Shown here piece by piece: positions 1 through 46,649 of a DNA stretch of 64,000 bases. The first letter of the stretch is position 1, and every line of letters starts with the position of its first letter. The position numbers and the translations under genes were made by a program. The notes below the pieces were generated by a model, which was not told the DNA's origin, did no database searches, and saw only the letters and a list, made by a program, of their open reading frames with translations. The DNA lies in the IMG/VR virus record IMGVR_UViG_3300009108_000751, positions 124,001 through 188,000 of that record; one strand, 5' to 3'.

Positions 1-1
1 T

Positions 2-514
2 AAGTTGAATGACAGCTTATCTGCAGGTCCTCGTTTCACAGGCACAGTTCGCGAATGGTACGAGACCCTGGTCGAGTCCGTTATCGATGTTGCTAACACC
101 ATCCACCGCAAGACACTCCGTGGTTCCGCGAACTTCGTGGTCACCTCTCCGGATGTCTGCACAATGTTCGAAGCTTCAGTGATGTATCGCCCAAGCCTCA
201 GCATTGACAGCGAAGGTCAGGTTTCCTCCCCATTCAGCCTCGGTGCTGAAAAGGTTGGTACCTTGAGCAACCGCTTTACGGTCTACAAGGACCCATACTT
301 CCCTCGCAACAAGATTCTTGTTGGTTATAAGGGTGGTAGCTACCTTGAGACAGGATACGTTTATGCTCCGTATGTTCCGCTGATCGTCACACCAACGATC
401 TTCGCGCCAGAAGACTTCACCCCTCGTAAGGGCGTGATGACTCGCTACGGCAAGAAGATGGTTCGCGCTGACTTCTACGGTACCGTTACGGTTGCTGACT
501 TGAACGTCATCTAA
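2..514 (+). CDS. Major capsid protein, C-terminal part (T4 gp23-like), truncated by window start
   Basis: Motifs 'RGSANFVVTSP', 'VYKDPYF', 'VGYKG..YLETGYVYAPYVPL', 'F.P.KGVMTRYG' match the gp23 C-terminus; frame is open from position 2. Confidence 0.93.
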   Translation, partial: KLNDSLSAGPRFTGTVREWYETLVESVIDVANTIHRKTLRGSANFVVTSPDVCTMFEASVMYRPSLSIDSEGQVSSPFSLGAEKVGTLSNRFTVYKDPYFPRNKILVGYKGGSYLETGYVYAPYVPLIVTPTIFAPEDFTPRKGVMTRYGKKMVRADFYGTVTVADLNVI

Positions 515-523
515 GCGACAATA

Positions 524-570
524 GAAACTTCGGTTTCATGAAGGGGAGTCCGAAAGGGCTCCCCTTTTTT
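524..570 (+). terminator. C(UUCG)G hairpin followed by an intrinsic terminator after the capsid gene
   Basis: gaaac-ttcg-gtttc (524-537), then aaggggagtcc-gaaa-gggctcccctt and a T-run. Confidence 0.9.
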
Positions 571-606
571 TTGTCTCTTTATTTCCTTAAGATTCCAGCA
601 CGGGAA

Positions 607-705
607 CATATCTAATAGTAGGCCCGTCACATTGCATAAGGGTGAACTCGCCACCGTGCCGGAATCATGCGAACAAAATAAAGGAGAAAATTATGCCAAA
701 GGTTA
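607..705 (+). repeat. 99-bp direct repeat, copy 1 (late promoter, structured leader, SD and first codons)
   Basis: Identical to 1150-1248 by direct comparison. Confidence 0.97.
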
Positions 706-1061
706 TTATTTCTGATGATAAAGGTCTGAACCAAACCGCAGGTTCGGGGCTGGAGTCTAGGAGCGCTCACTATAGTAGCTACGGGACTACTACAGCTTTA
801 GCAACAGGTTCTTTCCCGCTTCTTCCTGCGGGAATAGTAAACACTGTTGACAGCACTAACAACGCACATGGTGTTAGATTGCCCAACGCTGCAGGAGCAG
901 GTCAGATCATGATCGTTAGAAATGTAGACAGTGCTCAGGACTGCGTTATTAGAAATCAAGCTGAGACAGGTGCCATCCTTGTCACGCTCGGCGAAGGTAA
1001 GACTGCTCTTTTCGTAAGTACAGCTTCTGGAAATAACTGGTCTGGAAGTCAGCTCGACTAA
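693..1061 (+). CDS. Putative capsid decoration/head-fibre-like protein, paralog A (122 aa)
   Basis: SD aaggag 681-686, ATG 693; directly after the MCP; N-terminus MPKVIISDDKGL matches paralog B; 'LP..AG.GQIMIV...LFV...W' fibre-like domain. Confidence 0.6.
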   Translation: MPKVIISDDKGLNQTAGSGLESRSAHYSSYGTTTALATGSFPLLPAGIVNTVDSTNNAHGVRLPNAAGAGQIMIVRNVDSAQDCVIRNQAETGAILVTLGEGKTALFVSTASGNNWSGSQLD

Positions 1062-1089
1062 AAGAAAACTCAAAAGTGTTATTGCAATC

Positions 1090-1116
1090 AAGGTGCTCAA
1101 TCGAGCACCTTTTTTG
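1090..1116 (+). terminator. Intrinsic terminator
   Basis: aaggtgctc-aatc-gagcacctt followed by a T-run. Confidence 0.85.
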
Positions 1117-1149
1117 TTTGAATATTTTCTTCTTTTTTAAGATCTTCCC

Positions 1150-1248
1150 CATATCTAATAGTAGGCCCGTCACATTGCATAAGGGTGAACTCGCCACCGT
1201 GCCGGAATCATGCGAACAAAATAAAGGAGAAAATTATGCCAAAGGTTA
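1150..1248 (+). repeat. 99-bp direct repeat, copy 2
   Basis: Identical to 607-705. Confidence 0.97.
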
Positions 1249-1682
1249 CGTATTCAGATTCGAAGGGGCTCGTCCAGACGTCAGGTGCTGGGATGGCTCT
1301 AACCGGCTTCATGCATGGTCAAAAATGCCCACAGAAGTCGGTAACAAGCACAGACACGCTTACTGTTGAAGACAGTGGCAAGTTAATTACCCTGACGGGA
1401 TCAGCATTTACTTTGTCGCTGCCCAGTGTCTCAGCGGCAAAAGGATGCCACTATACGATCGTTGCTGGTCAAGCTGCGAATTATGTCCTTTCTGAGCTCG
1501 TCGGAACTGACGACAACGTTTTGACGATGGTAAGCGTAAATGCGTCTGCTACTGAAAGAGATCACGCTTTTACCACAGCTACTCTGAGTGGCGGAGCTAT
1601 CGGAGACAGGTTTTACGCCGTCTCTAACGGAACTTGGTGGGTCATCACGGCCTTCGCCAATGCTGCCGTAGCCGCCGCATAA
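1236..1682 (+). CDS. Putative capsid decoration/head-fibre-like protein, paralog B (148 aa)
   Basis: SD and ATG lie within the repeat; MPKVTYSDSKGL; 'LTVEDSGKLI..TLSLP...G..YTI...SNGT.W' pattern. Confidence 0.6.
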   Translation: MPKVTYSDSKGLVQTSGAGMALTGFMHGQKCPQKSVTSTDTLTVEDSGKLITLTGSAFTLSLPSVSAAKGCHYTIVAGQAANYVLSELVGTDDNVLTMVSVNASATERDHAFTTATLSGGAIGDRFYAVSNGTWWVITAFANAAVAAA

Positions 1683-1727
1683 TATAGTGGTTGACAGCTA
1701 AGACTTAGTACTGTCACACTAGAAGAG

Positions 1728-1760
1728 AAAGGCGCCCCCAAGTGGGGCGCCTTTTTTTTT
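1728..1760 (+). terminator. Intrinsic terminator
   Basis: aaaggcgcccc-caagt-ggggcgccttt followed by a long T-run. Confidence 0.9.
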
Positions 1761-1796
1761 GTTCGTTTTTTCGTCTAGACCTAAGTCTCGTGACTT

Positions 1797-1806
1797 CATA
1801 CTTATA
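1797..1806 (+). promoter_or_regulatory. Putative late promoter (catacttata)
   Basis: ATA(T/C)TTA motif recurring upstream of virion genes. Confidence 0.6.
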
Positions 1807-1830
1807 CTGTGAGAGTTTCTGGAGAGCCTT

Positions 1831-3003
1831 GTGGCAACATTCGCTAATACAACTAACCCAACACCATTCGGTGCTTTTGATAGTGACTCAGAGTTTCAAT
1901 CTGAAGCAGACAAGATGGTTACTTTTGTTAAGAGGAAGCTCGGAGATGACATTCTGTCTGTCGAGTTGACCAAAAAGCAGATCTGGGCTTGTTTCGAAGA
2001 ATCTTTCTTCCAGTACGGGCAGATTGTTAATGAATACCAAGCTAGGTCACAATTATCGACTTTTTTAGGGACTTCAACTGGAAGCATGTCGGGATCTGAG
2101 CAAAAGTTCCCGCATGAGACACTGCAGTTCTTAGAGAGGATGGCAGAGCCCTATGCCTTTGAAGCAGGTGTAGGAGGCTCGTACGACTCAGTCTCAGGAT
2201 CGATTCAGCTAATCAAAGGCCAGCAAGATTATGACATTTACGATAAGCTACAAGATGATTCTGGAAATTTGTTGTATTCTTCGTCTCTCAATACCTACAG
2301 TTCCAAAATGAAGATTCAAGAAGTTTTCCACTTCAATCCCCAAGCAGCATATCGATTCTTCGATACAACCTCAGCTATCAATTACCTTAATAATGAATTT
2401 TCTTTTGAGTCTTTCACCCCGGAAACTATCTTTTATGTTCTCCCTGTTTTTGAAGATATCTTGAGGGCAGGGCAAATGGATGTTTCCCACCGTGTACGAA
2501 GATCTAATTATTCTTTTAAGGTGATCGGAACCAAGATAAGAATCTACCCAACGCCTTCAGGAGATCAGACTAATCGAAAACTATGGATAAGAGTGGCATT
2601 TGCACCTGACCCCCTTAACCCCTCTTACGGGGATGATACAATATACGGTGTATCCAATTTATCCAATGTTCCCTTTGGAGATCTTACTTATTCTAACGTA
2701 AATTCAATAGGTCGTCAATGGGTAAGGCAGTATGCACTTTCTCTTTCTACAGAGCTTCTGGGCCTGGTAAGATCTAAGTTCAAATCTTTACCAATACCAA
2801 ATGCAGATATCCAGCTTGATGGAGATAATCTGATATCACAGGGAAGAGAAGATAAGAAAGAGCTGGTTACAAAGCTCCGTGAGATGCTTGATTCTCTGAC
2901 GTATGATAAGATTATTGAGATGAACGCTATCAAGGCCGAGAATATACAGAAACAACTTAGAACCATTCCGATACCTAACGGTAATGCAATTACAATGGGT
3001 TAG
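1831..3003 (+). CDS. Neck/head-tail adaptor protein (T4 gp13-like)
   Basis: 'KRKLG.....VELT..QI' N-terminus and 'WVRQYAL....ELLG.VRSKF...PIP...LDG' C-terminus; position after capsid genes. Confidence 0.75.
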   Translation: MATFANTTNPTPFGAFDSDSEFQSEADKMVTFVKRKLGDDILSVELTKKQIWACFEESFFQYGQIVNEYQARSQLSTFLGTSTGSMSGSEQKFPHETLQFLERMAEPYAFEAGVGGSYDSVSGSIQLIKGQQDYDIYDKLQDDSGNLLYSSSLNTYSSKMKIQEVFHFNPQAAYRFFDTTSAINYLNNEFSFESFTPETIFYVLPVFEDILRAGQMDVSHRVRRSNYSFKVIGTKIRIYPTPSGDQTNRKLWIRVAFAPDPLNPSYGDDTIYGVSNLSNVPFGDLTYSNVNSIGRQWVRQYALSLSTELLGLVRSKFKSLPIPNADIQLDGDNLISQGREDKKELVTKLREMLDSLTYDKIIEMNAIKAENIQKQLRTIPIPNGNAITMG

Positions 3004-4893: not shown

Positions 4894-4915
4894 GGTGATA
4901 TTTGGCAGAAAGAAG

Positions 4916-4925
4916 CATATTTATA
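4916..4925 (+). promoter_or_regulatory. Putative late promoter (catatttata)
   Basis: ATATTTA motif upstream of sheath 1. Confidence 0.65.
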
Positions 4926-4959
4926 GGCGTGCATAAGAGTCCTGTAGGAGACTGAACAT

Positions 4960-11232: not shown

Positions 11233-11253
11233 GGGACGTTTTTGTTCGATGCA

Positions 11254-11263
11254 TATATTTATA
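11254..11263 (+). promoter_or_regulatory. Putative late promoter (tatatttata)
   Basis: ATATTTA motif upstream of the tube gene. Confidence 0.6.
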
Positions 11264-11286
11264 ACGTGTCACCCTAGGAGATTGTA

Positions 11287-12957: not shown

Positions 12958-12959
12958 CG

Positions 12960-12969
12960 CATATTTAAT
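12960..12969 (+). promoter_or_regulatory. Putative late promoter (catatttaat)
   Basis: ATATTTA motif upstream of the tape measure gene. Confidence 0.6.
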
Positions 12970-12989
12970 CTTGACTCCCGAGAACCTCT

Positions 12990-21956: not shown

Positions 21957-21986
21957 GTTATTGAAACTGCATCCGGCCTAGTAAGA

Positions 21987-22015
21987 GTGTAAATCTTGAG
22001 CTGAGTCCATATAAT
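21987..22015 (+). promoter_or_regulatory. sigma70-like early/middle promoter GTGTAA-N17-TATAAT
   Basis: Same GTGTAA...TATAAT layout at 44184 and 48940. Confidence 0.65.
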
Positions 22016-22020
22016 AGCGT

Positions 22021-23211
22021 GTGAAAGTTTGCATCAACCAGAGTATCCTAGGATCCGAACAGCACCTAGTAACTGATTTTAAGTCAGGTGCATCTTGGGT
22101 TAATGAGCCACCCGAAGATGCACTTACGGTGGGATTCAGTGACAGCGAAGAGCTTCAAGTAATATCACGCCTTTCAGGAATCTCAATACCCCGCCACCCC
22201 GACCCTAAGTTTGCAGGCCCTTTTAAGACATTTGGAATTAAAAATATACTCTGGTCGCAAGCTTTGCCTAGGAGTGTGTACAAGAAGTACTTTCAGAATA
22301 TCCAGGATGCTATCAGATTGAACGCGGACTCTGATCAATACGATTACTTTAAAGAGAGGGTTTCAAGGCAACAGAAGCTAATCTCGTCATTGCAGCCTGC
22401 CCACATCGATGAAAAGATCTTTGCTCGAAGGTACGGAGATCCTGCTACTGTTAATAAGTCGGTCTTGACTTCCTTCATGCCTATGAAGGGTGTGACTAAG
22501 AAAGTAGGCTACAATCTTACCGGCACCAACACAGGACGACTCACGATATCAGAAGGCCCCCAGATTCTTACGCTTAAGGCGGAGATGAGGGATATCTTGA
22601 CCTCTCGCTATGAAGGGGGAAAGATCATGCAGTTCGATTACGTAAGCCTGGAGCCTCGCGTTGCACTCATCCTCTCCGGCCAGGATCCTATCAAAGATAT
22701 CTACACTGACCTCTGCGACAAAGTTCTGGACAGCCAGCACGGTCGACAAACTGCAAAGTTGCTGACCATTGCCACGCTGTATGGCATGGGTGTTCGCCGG
22801 GTCAAAGAGTTGATCGGGGTGAGCAAGCACACAGCGCTGGATGTTCTCAAGAATCTGGAGATCTTCTTCGGGGTGGGTGAGGTAAAAGCTCACTTGGAGG
22901 AAGAAGCAAAGTCTGGTTTTATCAAGAATCACTTTGGTAGAAACATCCGAGTTCGCAATAATGCGTCACACGTGCTCTACAACAACTATATACAATCCTC
23001 AGCGATGGATGCAGCACTCGAAGGCTTTTATCAGATTGTGCAAGGTGTAGAGAAGGAAGGCCACAAGTGTGTTCCGCTCTTTCTTTTGCATGATGCGATT
23101 ATTTTTGACTGCCACCCTGAGTGCTTTGACAAGCTTGAGGATATAATGGCACCAGGGCAACAAATACCTGCTTTTAAATCGCGGCTCTACATGGGCGCGG
23201 AGGAACTATAA
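22021..23211 (+). CDS. Minimal family-A DNA polymerase-like protein (no exonuclease domain)
   Basis: 'TGRL', motif A 'DYVSLEPR', motif B 'RQTAK....TLYGMG', 'NYIQS', motif C 'LHDA'. Confidence 0.8.
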   Translation: MKVCINQSILGSEQHLVTDFKSGASWVNEPPEDALTVGFSDSEELQVISRLSGISIPRHPDPKFAGPFKTFGIKNILWSQALPRSVYKKYFQNIQDAIRLNADSDQYDYFKERVSRQQKLISSLQPAHIDEKIFARRYGDPATVNKSVLTSFMPMKGVTKKVGYNLTGTNTGRLTISEGPQILTLKAEMRDILTSRYEGGKIMQFDYVSLEPRVALILSGQDPIKDIYTDLCDKVLDSQHGRQTAKLLTIATLYGMGVRRVKELIGVSKHTALDVLKNLEIFFGVGEVKAHLEEEAKSGFIKNHFGRNIRVRNNASHVLYNNYIQSSAMDAALEGFYQIVQGVEKEGHKCVPLFLLHDAIIFDCHPECFDKLEDIMAPGQQIPAFKSRLYMGAEEL

Positions 23212-33112: not shown

Positions 33113-33374
33113 GTTCGGTGGGGGAAAGTTTCGTATCCACCATGTTGTGGATGACTGGGATCTTGGGTTCTATGATGGAAGCGCAGTCAAGCTCATTCTC
33201 GAGGCAAAATTTGGCGAGCAAGAGATACAAGATATAGAAAAAGCGATAGAGTATCTTAGGCACCAAATTAGGTCGAGGGGTGAAGAGATTGAACGAGCAA
33301 ATGAGGAACAGACTGCGACTTGGCGCCCTGGCTGTGGTAATTACATCGTTAGTGATACCGAATCCGACGATTGA
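33087..33374 (+). CDS. DUF3310-like protein
   Basis: 'NHP..F', 'GF..GSAVK.I', 'QDIEKAIEYL'. Confidence 0.6.
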   Translation: MSDPNHPRKFGGGKFRIHHVVDDWDLGFYDGSAVKLILEAKFGEQEIQDIEKAIEYLRHQIRSRGEEIERANEEQTATWRPGCGNYIVSDTESDD

Positions 33375-33476
33375 CGCCCTCTCTCGCATAGCCCTTATCG
33401 GACTTTTTGCCGACTGGGCATATCAGCTATATAAACGTTCATAAAACTTAGTATAATACGTCATTGGAGCTTTGAA

Positions 33477-33713
33477 ATGGCAAAGAAGATTTATCGTCTT
33501 GATGATGAAGTGGTCGCAGAAGTGGCCCGTTCCCTACAGCGCGCCCTGCTTACAGGCACTGACATTGTTGATCACATTCGCGCTATTGAACTTAACGTTG
33601 CTCGAGGGTCAAACATGATCGTATTAAGCCCAGAGTATCTTGAAAGAACCCAGACAAATGACCAACGCATGGTCGACGAAGCTGAAGAATTATCTTTCGA
33701 GGGTGAAAAATAA
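33477..33713 (+). CDS. Hypothetical protein
   Basis: SD ggag; 'LQRALLTGTDIVDH.R'. Confidence 0.7.
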   Translation: MAKKIYRLDDEVVAEVARSLQRALLTGTDIVDHIRAIELNVARGSNMIVLSPEYLERTQTNDQRMVDEAEELSFEGEK

Positions 33714-34083: not shown

Positions 34084-34092
34084 GTCTTAAGT

Positions 34093-34102
34093 GATATTTA
34101 GT
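34093..34102 (+). promoter_or_regulatory. Putative late promoter (gatatttagt)
   Basis: ATATTTA upstream of the fibre cassette. Confidence 0.6.
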
Positions 34103-34118
34103 ATTGCGAGAGACTATA

Positions 34119-46623: not shown

Positions 46624-46625
46624 AG

Positions 46626-46635
46626 CATATTTAGA
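46626..46635 (+). promoter_or_regulatory. Putative late promoter (catatttaga)
   Basis: ATATTTA upstream of 46650. Confidence 0.65.
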
Positions 46636-46649
46636 AACAGGAGAAAATA

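What the first reader, a model, noticed from the sequence alone, without database searches (positions are those of the whole stretch)
607..1248. Identical 99-bp leader with a predicted pseudoknot upstream of two divergent decoration-like genes
Seen: 607-705 equals 1150-1248 exactly, while the two ORFs diverge after four codons. Between the late motif and the SD the RNA can form P1 CCG-U-CAC (624-630) with GUG-C-CGG (656-662) and P2 GGUG (641-644) with CACC (652-655). The looped-out UUGCAU (632-637) pairs with AUGCGA (667-672), giving a pseudoknot ending 8 nt before the SD (681-686). It does not match riboswitch or ribozyme consensuses I can recall. Each unit has its own terminator. Inference: a new cis-regulatory RNA (autogenous operator like the T4 gene 32 pseudoknot, a ligand sensor or a stabiliser). 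The repeat could also allow recombinational loss or swapping of the 543-bp gene A cassette.
Basis: partly seen in the sequence, partly recalled or inferred. Interest (0 to 1): 0.75.

Follow-up and report, generated by a model that had tools for sequence, protein, structure and literature searches.

The report
Start-codon-pairing pseudoknot leader of phage spike genes
The exact 99-bp repeat is a complete late-gene expression cassette (promoter, structured 5' leader, ribosome site, first four codons). Its leader belongs to an apparently undescribed RNA family of uncultured T4-like phages (some from Tara Oceans samples) that folds into a pseudoknot and pairs with its own start codon, probably to control translation of swappable spike-like virion proteins.

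Summary
The repeat is real: window 607-705 equals 1150-1248 exactly. It starts at a T4-late-type promoter element and ends one base after codon 4.

The leader is not private to this phage. About 60 distinct versions occur in viral and metagenome contigs. Each heads a transcription unit for small proteins that share a 20-residue N-terminus and have unrelated bodies.

Two other helices fit better:
- P3': the P2 loop UCGC (648-651) pairs with GCGA (669-672). It is 100% paired, with two pairs that change on both sides.
- P4: the invariant internal loop GCAUAA (634-639) pairs with UUAUGC across the start codon (691-696). A G-C to C-G swap in genes that start AUGG supports it, as does a register-shifted variant.

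The Shine-Dalgarno stays unpaired. No Rfam family matches.

My best reading is a new cis-regulatory leader that controls translation by sequestering the start codon. The effector is unknown. Near-identical phages carry different genes behind the same leader, so the cassette also marks a swapping hotspot.

The parts
540..567 (+). Intrinsic terminator after the major capsid (gp23-like) gene, which ends at 514
   Evidence: 12-bp G+C stem plus T run; Pfam Gp23 E 3.3e-36 for 5-511
607..614 (+). Late-promoter element CATATCTA of copy 1, at -13 to -6 of the inferred start A620. The exact repeat begins here
   Evidence: T-11, A-10, T-7 and A-6 are invariant at fixed distance in 52 distinct upstream regions. 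A (C)ATATTTA motif also lies upstream of other structural genes of this phage. Promoter function is inferred
620..692 (+). 5' UTR of gene A, from the inferred transcription start at invariant A620 to the base before the ATG
   Evidence: the start site is inferred from T4-late promoter geometry and not measured
624..662 (+). P1, 624-630 with 656-662 (U627.C659 mismatch in this phage), enclosing P2, 641-644 with 652-655
   Evidence: P1 is 97.2% paired, with A-U/G-C/U-A and C-G/U-A swaps. P2 is 100% paired, with C-G in 29 and G-C in 28 sequences
648..672 (+). P3' pseudoknot: P2 loop UCGC 648-651 with GCGA 669-672
   Evidence: 100% paired in 57 sequences. Pair types are U-A 53 / C-G 4 and G-C 51 / A-U 6, with no one-sided changes
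634..696 (+). P4 long-range helix: internal loop GCAUAA 634-639 with UUAUGC 691-696 (AUG = 693-695)
   Evidence: G-C 51 / C-G 4; the only failures are two misaligned rows that really form 7 bp.: L181 has a register-shifted complement.: 56/56 leader-linked genes keep the complement, against 6/14 leaderless paralogues
681..686 (+). Shine-Dalgarno AAGGAG of gene A, in the variable-length spacer between P3' and P4. No conserved pairing partner was found
693..1061 (+). Gene A, 122 aa: conserved N-terminal module MPKVxISDxKGLxQ plus a beta-rich body
   Evidence: pLDDT 79.5; best hit is a tailspike N-terminal region, E 6e-5
1090..1111 (+). Intrinsic terminator after gene A
1150..1248 (+). Copy 2 of the cassette. 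Promoter element 1150-1157; inferred start 1163; P1 1167-1173/1199-1205; P2 1184-1187/1195-1198; P3' 1191-1194/1212-1215; P4 1177-1182/1234-1239; SD 1224-1229; ATG 1236
   Evidence: identical to 607-705; found by the covariance model at 85 bits
1236..1682 (+). Gene B, 148 aa: same N-terminal module, different body
   Evidence: pLDDT 88.5; best PDB hit is the Pa223 capsid spike, E 7.3e-6, TM 0.55
1722..1760 (+). Intrinsic terminator after gene B; the neck-protein-like gene starts at 1831

Best explanation
Each 99-bp copy is a self-contained late expression cassette. It holds a T4-late-type promoter (CATATCTA at -13 to -6), an inferred transcript start at A620/A1163, a 73-nt structured 5' UTR, the Shine-Dalgarno, the AUG and four codons.

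The UTR is one member of a conserved, phage-restricted RNA family. It folds into P1, P2 and a loop-to-tail pseudoknot (P3'). Its invariant internal loop GCAUAA base-pairs with UUAUGC across the start codon (P4). The Shine-Dalgarno is left single-stranded.

I infer that this fold gates or tunes translation initiation of the first gene of the transcription unit by sequestering the AUG. A trans-acting factor that recognises the invariant unpaired bases probably stabilises or releases the fold. In logic it resembles the start-site pseudoknots of the E. coli alpha-operon and rpsO mRNAs.

Shown here: the repeat, the conservation, the four helices by covariation, and the gene association. Inferred: the start site, the direction of the effect on translation, and the existence and identity of an effector.

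Separately, the cassette and the N-terminal coding module form the conserved 5' border of a locus where spike-like gene bodies are swapped, duplicated and lost. The 100% identity of the two copies most likely reflects gene conversion.
For: Conservation and gene association:
- Pattern scans and a covariance model recovered about 60 distinct leaders. All sit upstream of MPK/MVK-type genes.
- The model finds only these two copies in the 78-kb record, and only two in a near-identical 235-kb contig. The element is therefore gene-specific, not a general late leader.
- It occurs once per transcription unit. Paralogues that follow directly in the same operon have no leader.

Helices:
- P1 is 97% paired.
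- P2 is 100% paired (CG 29 / GC 28).
- P3' is 100% paired, with two double-change pairs.
- P4 is 97% paired (GC 51 / CG 4).
- None of 500 shuffles reaches the observed covariation score, and slid controls pair only 27-45% of cells.

Extra support for P4:
- Bulge CCAUAA occurs only with AUGG starts, 4 of 4.
- L181 has a different bulge, UAUAAUC, complementary to GAUUAUG.
- All 56 leader-linked genes keep AUUAUG plus the matching next base. Of 14 leaderless paralogues, 8 deviate.
- No search pattern ever included the start region.

Other points:
- A brute-force scan of the alignment finds P2, P3', P4 and only one further compatible helix. None involves the Shine-Dalgarno.
- The promoter element lies at a fixed distance, and the repeat begins exactly at its 5' edge.

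Gene conversion:
- Both copies share the lineage-specific U627.C659 mismatch.
- In strain L009 the slot-1 copy keeps two slot-1 variants, also seen in L048, that the window has lost.
Against: - No experimental data exist. The start site, the fold and any effect on expression are all inferred.
- The helices are individually weak (P1+P2 -9.2, P4 duplex -4.3, P3' -3.6 kcal/mol). The nested MFE is no better than shuffles.
- P4 covariation comes from two lineages only: one clade carrying four sequences, plus L181. Most of P4 is invariant, which is uninformative on its own.
- Homologues were collected with patterns that fixed parts of P1 and P2, so divergent members are under-sampled.
- A 6-bp A/U-rich helix at the AUG may be too weak to repress without a stabilising partner, and none is identified.
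- Whether a 6-nt linker (663-668) can span P1+P2 in three dimensions was not modelled.
Confidence: 0.6

Rival explanations
1. The element is a 5'-terminal stabiliser only. A compact fold at the very 5' end, closed onto the start region, protects a highly expressed late mRNA from 5'-end-dependent decay. It has no regulatory switch and no effector.
For: P1 starts about 4 nt from the inferred 5' end. The element occurs once per transcript and not once per gene. The distance to the Shine-Dalgarno varies widely, from about 8 to about 35 nt after the tail.
Against: A simple hairpin would be enough for stabilisation. Here the unpaired bases A664, C666, U668, A673 and the loop bases are invariant, there is a pseudoknot, and there is a covarying helix onto the AUG itself. 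All of this points to more than end protection.
Confidence: 0.2
2. The element is a riboswitch. The pseudoknotted core binds a small molecule, and binding controls whether the internal loop is free to pair with the start codon.
For: The core is small (about 50 nt), pseudoknotted and has invariant unpaired bases, as in the small pseudoknot riboswitch classes. Start-codon pairing could serve as the expression platform.
Against: No Rfam riboswitch family matches, even when the 121-nt stretch is searched alone at E up to 10. The regulated genes are structural spike-like proteins with no metabolic theme. The element was found in none of 185,579 prokaryotic species genomes.
Confidence: 0.07
3. The element is conserved only as recombination homology. 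Leader identity is kept because it is the crossover site for cassette exchange, as with PeSLs, and the RNA has no function.
For: Cassette swapping, tandem arrays of two or three units and loss of units are evident. The two copies look homogenised by gene conversion.
Against: Recombination homology does not predict compensatory double substitutions in four helices with almost no intermediates. It also does not predict a bulge-to-start-codon swap.
Confidence: 0.05

Closest known systems
E. coli alpha-operon (rpsM) S4 operator and rpsO S15 operator: start-site mRNA pseudoknots acting by ribosome entrapment
   Same: A 5'-leader pseudoknot takes in the ribosome binding site and start-codon region, while the 30S subunit can still bind (PMC10931766). 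Here too a leader helix pairs across the AUG and the Shine-Dalgarno stays unpaired.
   Different: There is no sequence or family relationship. This is a phage late structural gene and not a ribosomal protein operon. The effector is unknown and entrapment is untested.
T4 gene 32 mRNA 5' pseudoknot (autogenous operator)
   Same: Both lie in T4-type phages. Both are H-type pseudoknots at the 5' end of a leader, upstream of an A-rich spacer and the ribosome site.
   Different: The downstream genes here are spike-like and not a single-strand DNA-binding protein. The gene 32 pseudoknot nucleates cooperative coating of the leader and does not pair with the AUG.
PeSLs (promoter-early stem-loops) of T4-type phages
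   Same: Both are repeated small regulatory cassettes that flank variable genes and mediate modular shuffling, insertion, deletion and replacement between close relatives (PMC2839356, PMC4122927). The same pattern is seen at this locus.
   Different: PeSLs are sigma-70-type early promoters joined to terminator stem-loops and are scattered through hyperplastic regions. This cassette has a late-type promoter plus a structured, covarying 5' UTR and an N-terminal coding module. It occurs only at this one locus.
Pseudomonas phage Pa223 capsid spike gp52 and tailspike N-terminal anchor domains (for proteins A and B)
   Same: The best PDB match of the B model is 9ny6_C (E 7.3e-6, TM 0.55). Pa223 gp52 is a trimer anchored by an N-terminal attachment domain, residues 2-41 (bioRxiv 10.1101/2025.06.11.659172). 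That parallels the conserved N-terminal module with variable bodies seen here.
   Different: The similarity is moderate and there is no sequence homology. The A model matches tailspike N-terminal regions better than the capsid spike. The site of attachment on the virion is unknown.

Membership tests
Any Rfam 15 family (riboswitches, ribozymes, leaders, sRNAs) | Covariance-model match at or near the family's gathering score | tested here: not met
   cmscan at E up to 10 on 1-3000 and on 600-720 alone gives no hit inside 607-700
T4 gene 32-type autogenous pseudoknot operator | Lies in the leader of the gene for the protein that binds it (the single-strand DNA-binding protein gp32) | tested here: not met
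   The downstream genes A and B model as spike or tailspike-anchor-like beta proteins. They have no Pfam or PHROG gp32 hit
T4 gene 32-type autogenous pseudoknot operator | H-type pseudoknot at the 5' end of the leader, followed by an unstructured A/U-rich tract | tested here: inconclusive
   A pseudoknot (P2/P3') near the 5' end is supported. The spacer is A-rich and of variable length. But the leader also pairs with the AUG, which the gene 32 operator does not
PeSL regulatory cassette | Strong sigma-70-like early promoter | tested here: not met
   No sigma-70-like site lies in 560-700 or 1110-1240. The conserved upstream element is T4-late-like, xTAxxTA at -12 to -6
PeSL regulatory cassette | Many dispersed copies that flank variable ORFs and mark indel or replacement borders | tested here: inconclusive
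   Replacement borders coincide with the cassette. However, copies occur only at this locus, one to three per genome
Start-site pseudoknot operators (alpha-operon S4, rpsO S15 type) | A leader pseudoknot that includes the initiation region while leaving the Shine-Dalgarno accessible | tested here: met
   P4 pairs 634-639 with 691-696 across the AUG, with covariation. No conserved helix involves the Shine-Dalgarno
Start-site pseudoknot operators (alpha-operon S4, rpsO S15 type) | A specific repressor protein binds the pseudoknot and traps the 30S subunit | not testable with these tools
   Needs binding and toeprint assays
Riboswitch | Conserved aptamer plus a ligand, with regulated genes linked to that ligand's metabolism or transport | tested here: not met
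   The fold is conserved, but the regulated genes are structural and no known class matches. Ligand binding itself is not testable here
Phage capsid spike / tailspike anchor proteins (for A and B) | Fold similarity to solved virion spikes that have an N-terminal attachment segment | tested here: inconclusive
   B: 9ny6_C, E 7.3e-6, TM 0.55. A: 24qj, E 6.2e-5, TM 0.55. Alignment rmsd values are high. Trimer formation and capsid binding were not tested

The most novel reading that the evidence does not exclude
The leader is an assembly-coupled autogenous operator. When there is no free capsid site to occupy, the conserved 20-residue N-terminal attachment module of the spike proteins, or a partner that recognises it, binds the pseudoknot core and locks the internal loop onto the start codon. 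Spike synthesis would then be titrated against capsid assembly. Because the operator and the N-terminal module travel together as one portable unit, any new spike body acquired by recombination would be regulated and mounted correctly at once.
Probability: 0.15. Interest if true: 0.85.

Novelty: new variant of a known kind. Interest (0 to 1): 0.62.

Why it matters
- It would add a well-supported structured RNA class, with four covarying helices in about 75 nt, to the few known cis-regulatory RNAs of phage late genes. It comes from an uncultured lineage that has no close cultured relative.
- A leader that pairs directly with its own start codon through a pseudoknotted core is experimentally tractable. 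It could show how phages set the dose of accessory virion proteins.
- The link between a regulatory RNA, an N-terminal attachment module and freely exchanged spike bodies suggests a plug-and-play unit for diversifying virion surface proteins. That bears on host range and adsorption in the sea, and such a unit could serve as a portable expression and display module.

Tried and rejected
- **Thermodynamic significance.** The MFE is weaker than shuffles, so energy alone gives no support. Pseudoknots are outside that model.
Rejected on pair counts. The G634C variants and L181 would also break it.
- **A 5'-end GGC (621-623) pairing with GCC (695-697), as seen in the MFE.** Rejected, because AUGG-start genes keep GGC.
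- **A leader peptide or an in-frame N-terminal extension from GTG 642.** Rejected, because spacer lengths differ by amounts that are not multiples of three.
- **Cultured relatives.** Megablast, blastn and tblastn against 50,697 phage records find no leader and no protein B. The capsid protein matches at only 36-53% identity.
- **Prokaryotic genomes.** No instance in 185,579 species genomes.
- **Pfam and PHROGs for A and B.** Nothing significant.
- **Published IMG/VR catalogue of candidate structured RNAs (PMC10690425).** I tried to check whether the motif is listed, but its supplements are not held, so prior listing cannot be excluded.
- **Alternative hairpin 655-658/668-671.** It is compatible in at least 93% of sequences per pair but shows only one-sided changes. 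I kept it as a possible alternative conformer and not as part of the model.

Full report
**1. The observation**

Window 607-705 and 1150-1248 are identical over exactly 99 nt, and the identity stops on both sides. The repeat finder extends the similarity to 147 nt at 87% identity, with a spacing of 543 nt.

Terminator-like hairpins lie at 540-567, 1090-1111 and 1722-1760. Each of the two small genes (A, 693-1061; B, 1236-1682) therefore sits in its own unit.

The window is part of a 78-kb IMG/VR virus record with T4-type structural genes. A gp23-type capsid gene ends at 514 (Pfam E 3.3e-36). Neck-like, gp15-like and sheath genes follow.

**2. What the 99 bp contain**

Intergenic regions upstream of other structural genes of this phage share a (C)ATATTTA motif. 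In 52 distinct homologous upstream regions, T-11, A-10, T-7 and A-6 are invariant at a fixed distance from an invariant TA(G)G. This is the geometry of a T4 late promoter, with TATAAATA at -13 to -6 (established knowledge).

The repeat begins exactly at position -13 (C607). I therefore read the repeat as:
- the promoter, 607-614;
- the inferred start, A620;
- the 5' UTR, 620-692;
- the Shine-Dalgarno, 681-686;
- the AUG, 693-695;
- four codons plus one base.

The start site is inferred and not measured.

**3. Conservation elsewhere**

An exact 27-mer found only near-identical strains. Degenerate patterns in the viral collection and in metagenomes gave many more leaders. A covariance model built from 46 distinct cores then scored 73 sites at 68-90 bits in 70 loci.

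- All sites lie upstream of genes that begin MPK (or MVK) and share about 20 N-terminal residues. Their bodies are unrelated and range from 122 to 278 residues.
- The model finds only the two tandem copies in the own record and in a near-identical 235-kb contig. It finds one copy each in 136-kb and 63-kb contigs. The element is therefore gene-specific.
- It is absent from 50,697 GenBank phage records and from 185,579 prokaryotic species genomes.
- The capsid protein is at most 36-53% identical to any deposited phage.
- Some contigs and proteins carry Tara Oceans labels.

**4. Secondary structure**

On the 46-sequence core alignment, P1 is 96.6% paired. It shows C-G/U-A and A-U/G-C swaps, plus a variable fourth pair (G.U, A-U, G-C, or a mismatch as in this window). 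P2 is 100% paired, with C-G in 24 and G-C in 22 sequences.

Its pairs 633/671 and 637/667 fail in 26 and 24 sequences.

The tail instead pairs with the P2 hairpin loop: 648-651 (UCGC) with 669-672 (GCGA). This helix, P3', is 100% paired. Its pair types are U-A 42 / C-G 4 and G-C 40 / A-U 6, with no one-sided change. The loop and tail positions that vary were never fixed by any search pattern.

**5. Pairing with the start codon**

The invariant internal loop GCAUAA (634-639) is the exact complement of the invariant UUAUGC (691-696). Four results support this helix, P4.

- On a 57-sequence alignment reaching past the AUG, P4 is 97.1% paired. Pair 634/696 is G-C in 51 and C-G in 4 sequences. The only failures are two misaligned rows whose bulge GCAUAAU really gives 7 bp.
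- The four C-G cases are the first and third cassettes of the three-cassette arrays in L087 and L134/L042. There the gene starts AUGGUA and the bulge reads CCAUAA.
- A further variant, L181, has a different bulge, UAUAAUC, complementary to GAUUAUG in a shifted register. It also carries an A-U to U-A swap in P1.
- All 56 distinct leader-linked genes keep AUUAUG plus the matching next base. Only 6 of 14 paralogues that lack their own leader do so.

No search pattern included the start region.

A brute-force scan for conserved helices finds only P4, P3', P2 and one compatible alternative hairpin (655-658/668-671). It finds nothing that involves the Shine-Dalgarno.

For the whole four-helix model, none of 500 shuffles reaches the observed covariation score. 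Slid controls pair only 27-45% of cells, against 98.2% for the model.

**6. Caveats on the structure**

- The helices are individually weak, and the nested MFE is no better than shuffles.
- P4 covariation rests on two lineages.
- The patterns fixed parts of P1 and P2, so only the N positions could vary there.
- Three-dimensional feasibility was not modelled.
- The unpaired invariants A664, C666, U668 and A673 are not explained by any helix. They suggest tertiary contacts or a binding partner.

**7. Mechanism**

The best-supported reading is translational control by start-codon sequestration within a pseudoknotted 5' element, with the Shine-Dalgarno exposed. In logic it resembles the alpha-operon S4 and rpsO S15 start-site pseudoknots (PMC10931766). 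It is not a member of those families, nor of any Rfam family.

The element occurs once per transcript. L063 and L057 have one leader followed by three A-type genes, and second genes in L023, L060, L064 and others have none. This fits control of the first cistron or a role at the 5' end.

The rivals are a pure 5' stabiliser, a riboswitch, and recombination homology alone. They are weighed in their own sections.

**8. The proteins**

The AlphaFold models are beta-rich, with an N-terminal hairpin (B pLDDT 88.5; A pLDDT 79.5).

- The best solved match of B is the Pa223 capsid spike (E 7.3e-6, TM 0.55).
- The best solved match of A is a tailspike N-terminal region (E 6.2e-5).
- Both also match the CBA120 TSP4 N-terminus and baseplate-cup proteins.
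- A and B are distant paralogues (hhalign 92.6%).
- The Pa223 spike is anchored by an N-terminal attachment domain (bioRxiv 10.1101/2025.06.11.659172).

By analogy, the shared 20-residue module is probably the virion anchor. 'Decoration-like' is thus plausible but not shown.

The B body also exists with a different N-terminal module (MGxKRVGLARTQ) and a different short leader that lacks the element. Leader and N-terminal module therefore travel together as one 5' unit.

**9. Cassette dynamics**

- L015 has capsid gene-leader-A-neck gene. L010 has leader-B only.
- L048 is 93.6% identical to the window over 1-748 and 95.9% identical from 1794 on, but holds one unrelated gene between.
- L087 and L134 hold three tandem promoter-leader-gene-terminator units.

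The borders of replacement fall about 18 codons into the gene and after the terminator.

Both window copies share the lineage-specific U627.C659 mismatch. In the 96%-identical strain L009, the slot-1 copy keeps two variants (at -12 and -2) that it shares with slot 1 of L048, and the window has lost them. I infer gene conversion of slot 1 by slot 2.

This parallels PeSL-mediated shuffling (PMC2839356, PMC4122927). The promoter type and the distribution of copies differ, so it is not a PeSL.

**10. Novelty**

There is no Rfam match and no cultured relative. A catalogue of 8,495 candidate structured RNAs from IMG/VR exists (PMC10690425), but its alignments are not held here. Prior automatic listing therefore cannot be excluded.

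As a described and analysed element, I rate it a new variant of a known kind, namely cis-regulatory leader pseudoknots.

Noticed in passing
window 4894-4959, 11233-11286, 12958-12989, 34084-34118, 46624-46649 (intergenic): A (C)ATATTTA motif recurs 20-40 nt upstream of structural-gene start codons. It is probably this phage's version of the T4 late promoter TATAAATA. The leader copies carry the variant CATATCTA.
   Followed up: partly
L011 about 2850-3000, L012, L013 (upstream of B-type genes): The B-type body also occurs with a different, helix-like N-terminal module (MGxKRVGLARTQxLIENLKRE). It then has a short leader reading TATAAATGGAGG, without the RNA element. N-terminal module and leader swap together.
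   Followed up: partly
L087 2099-3546; L134 3418-4859 (also L042, L179): These loci hold three tandem promoter-leader-gene-terminator cassettes. Copies 1 and 3 resemble each other (bulge CCAUAA, genes starting MVK) and differ from copy 2.
   Followed up: yes
L063 1454-2783 (minus strand); L057 9186-10508: One leader is followed by three A-type paralogues in a single operon. The internal genes have AUCAUG rather than AUUAUG before and at the start codon.
   Followed up: yes
L010 581-1315: A 244-aa ORF of unknown function lies between the capsid gene and the leader in this relative. The leader is therefore not always directly downstream of the capsid terminator.
   Followed up: no
window 655-658 with 668-671 (and 1198-1201 with 1211-1214): An alternative hairpin, CGUG/UGCG, is compatible in at least 93% of homologues per pair. 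It would compete with P1, P2 and P3', so it may be an alternative conformer. It shows only one-sided changes.
   Followed up: partly
window 627/659 and 1170/1202: Both copies carry a U.C mismatch in the middle of P1. Most homologues have G.U, A-U or G-C there. It is a derived state shared by the two copies.
   Followed up: partly
window 21957-22476 and 33113-33657: My crude ATG-only ORF call leaves two stretches of about 520 and 545 nt without a long ATG-started ORF. They may hold genes with other start codons or be non-coding regions.
   Followed up: no
window 1-64000: ARAGORN finds no tRNA or tmRNA gene in the whole window.
   Followed up: yes
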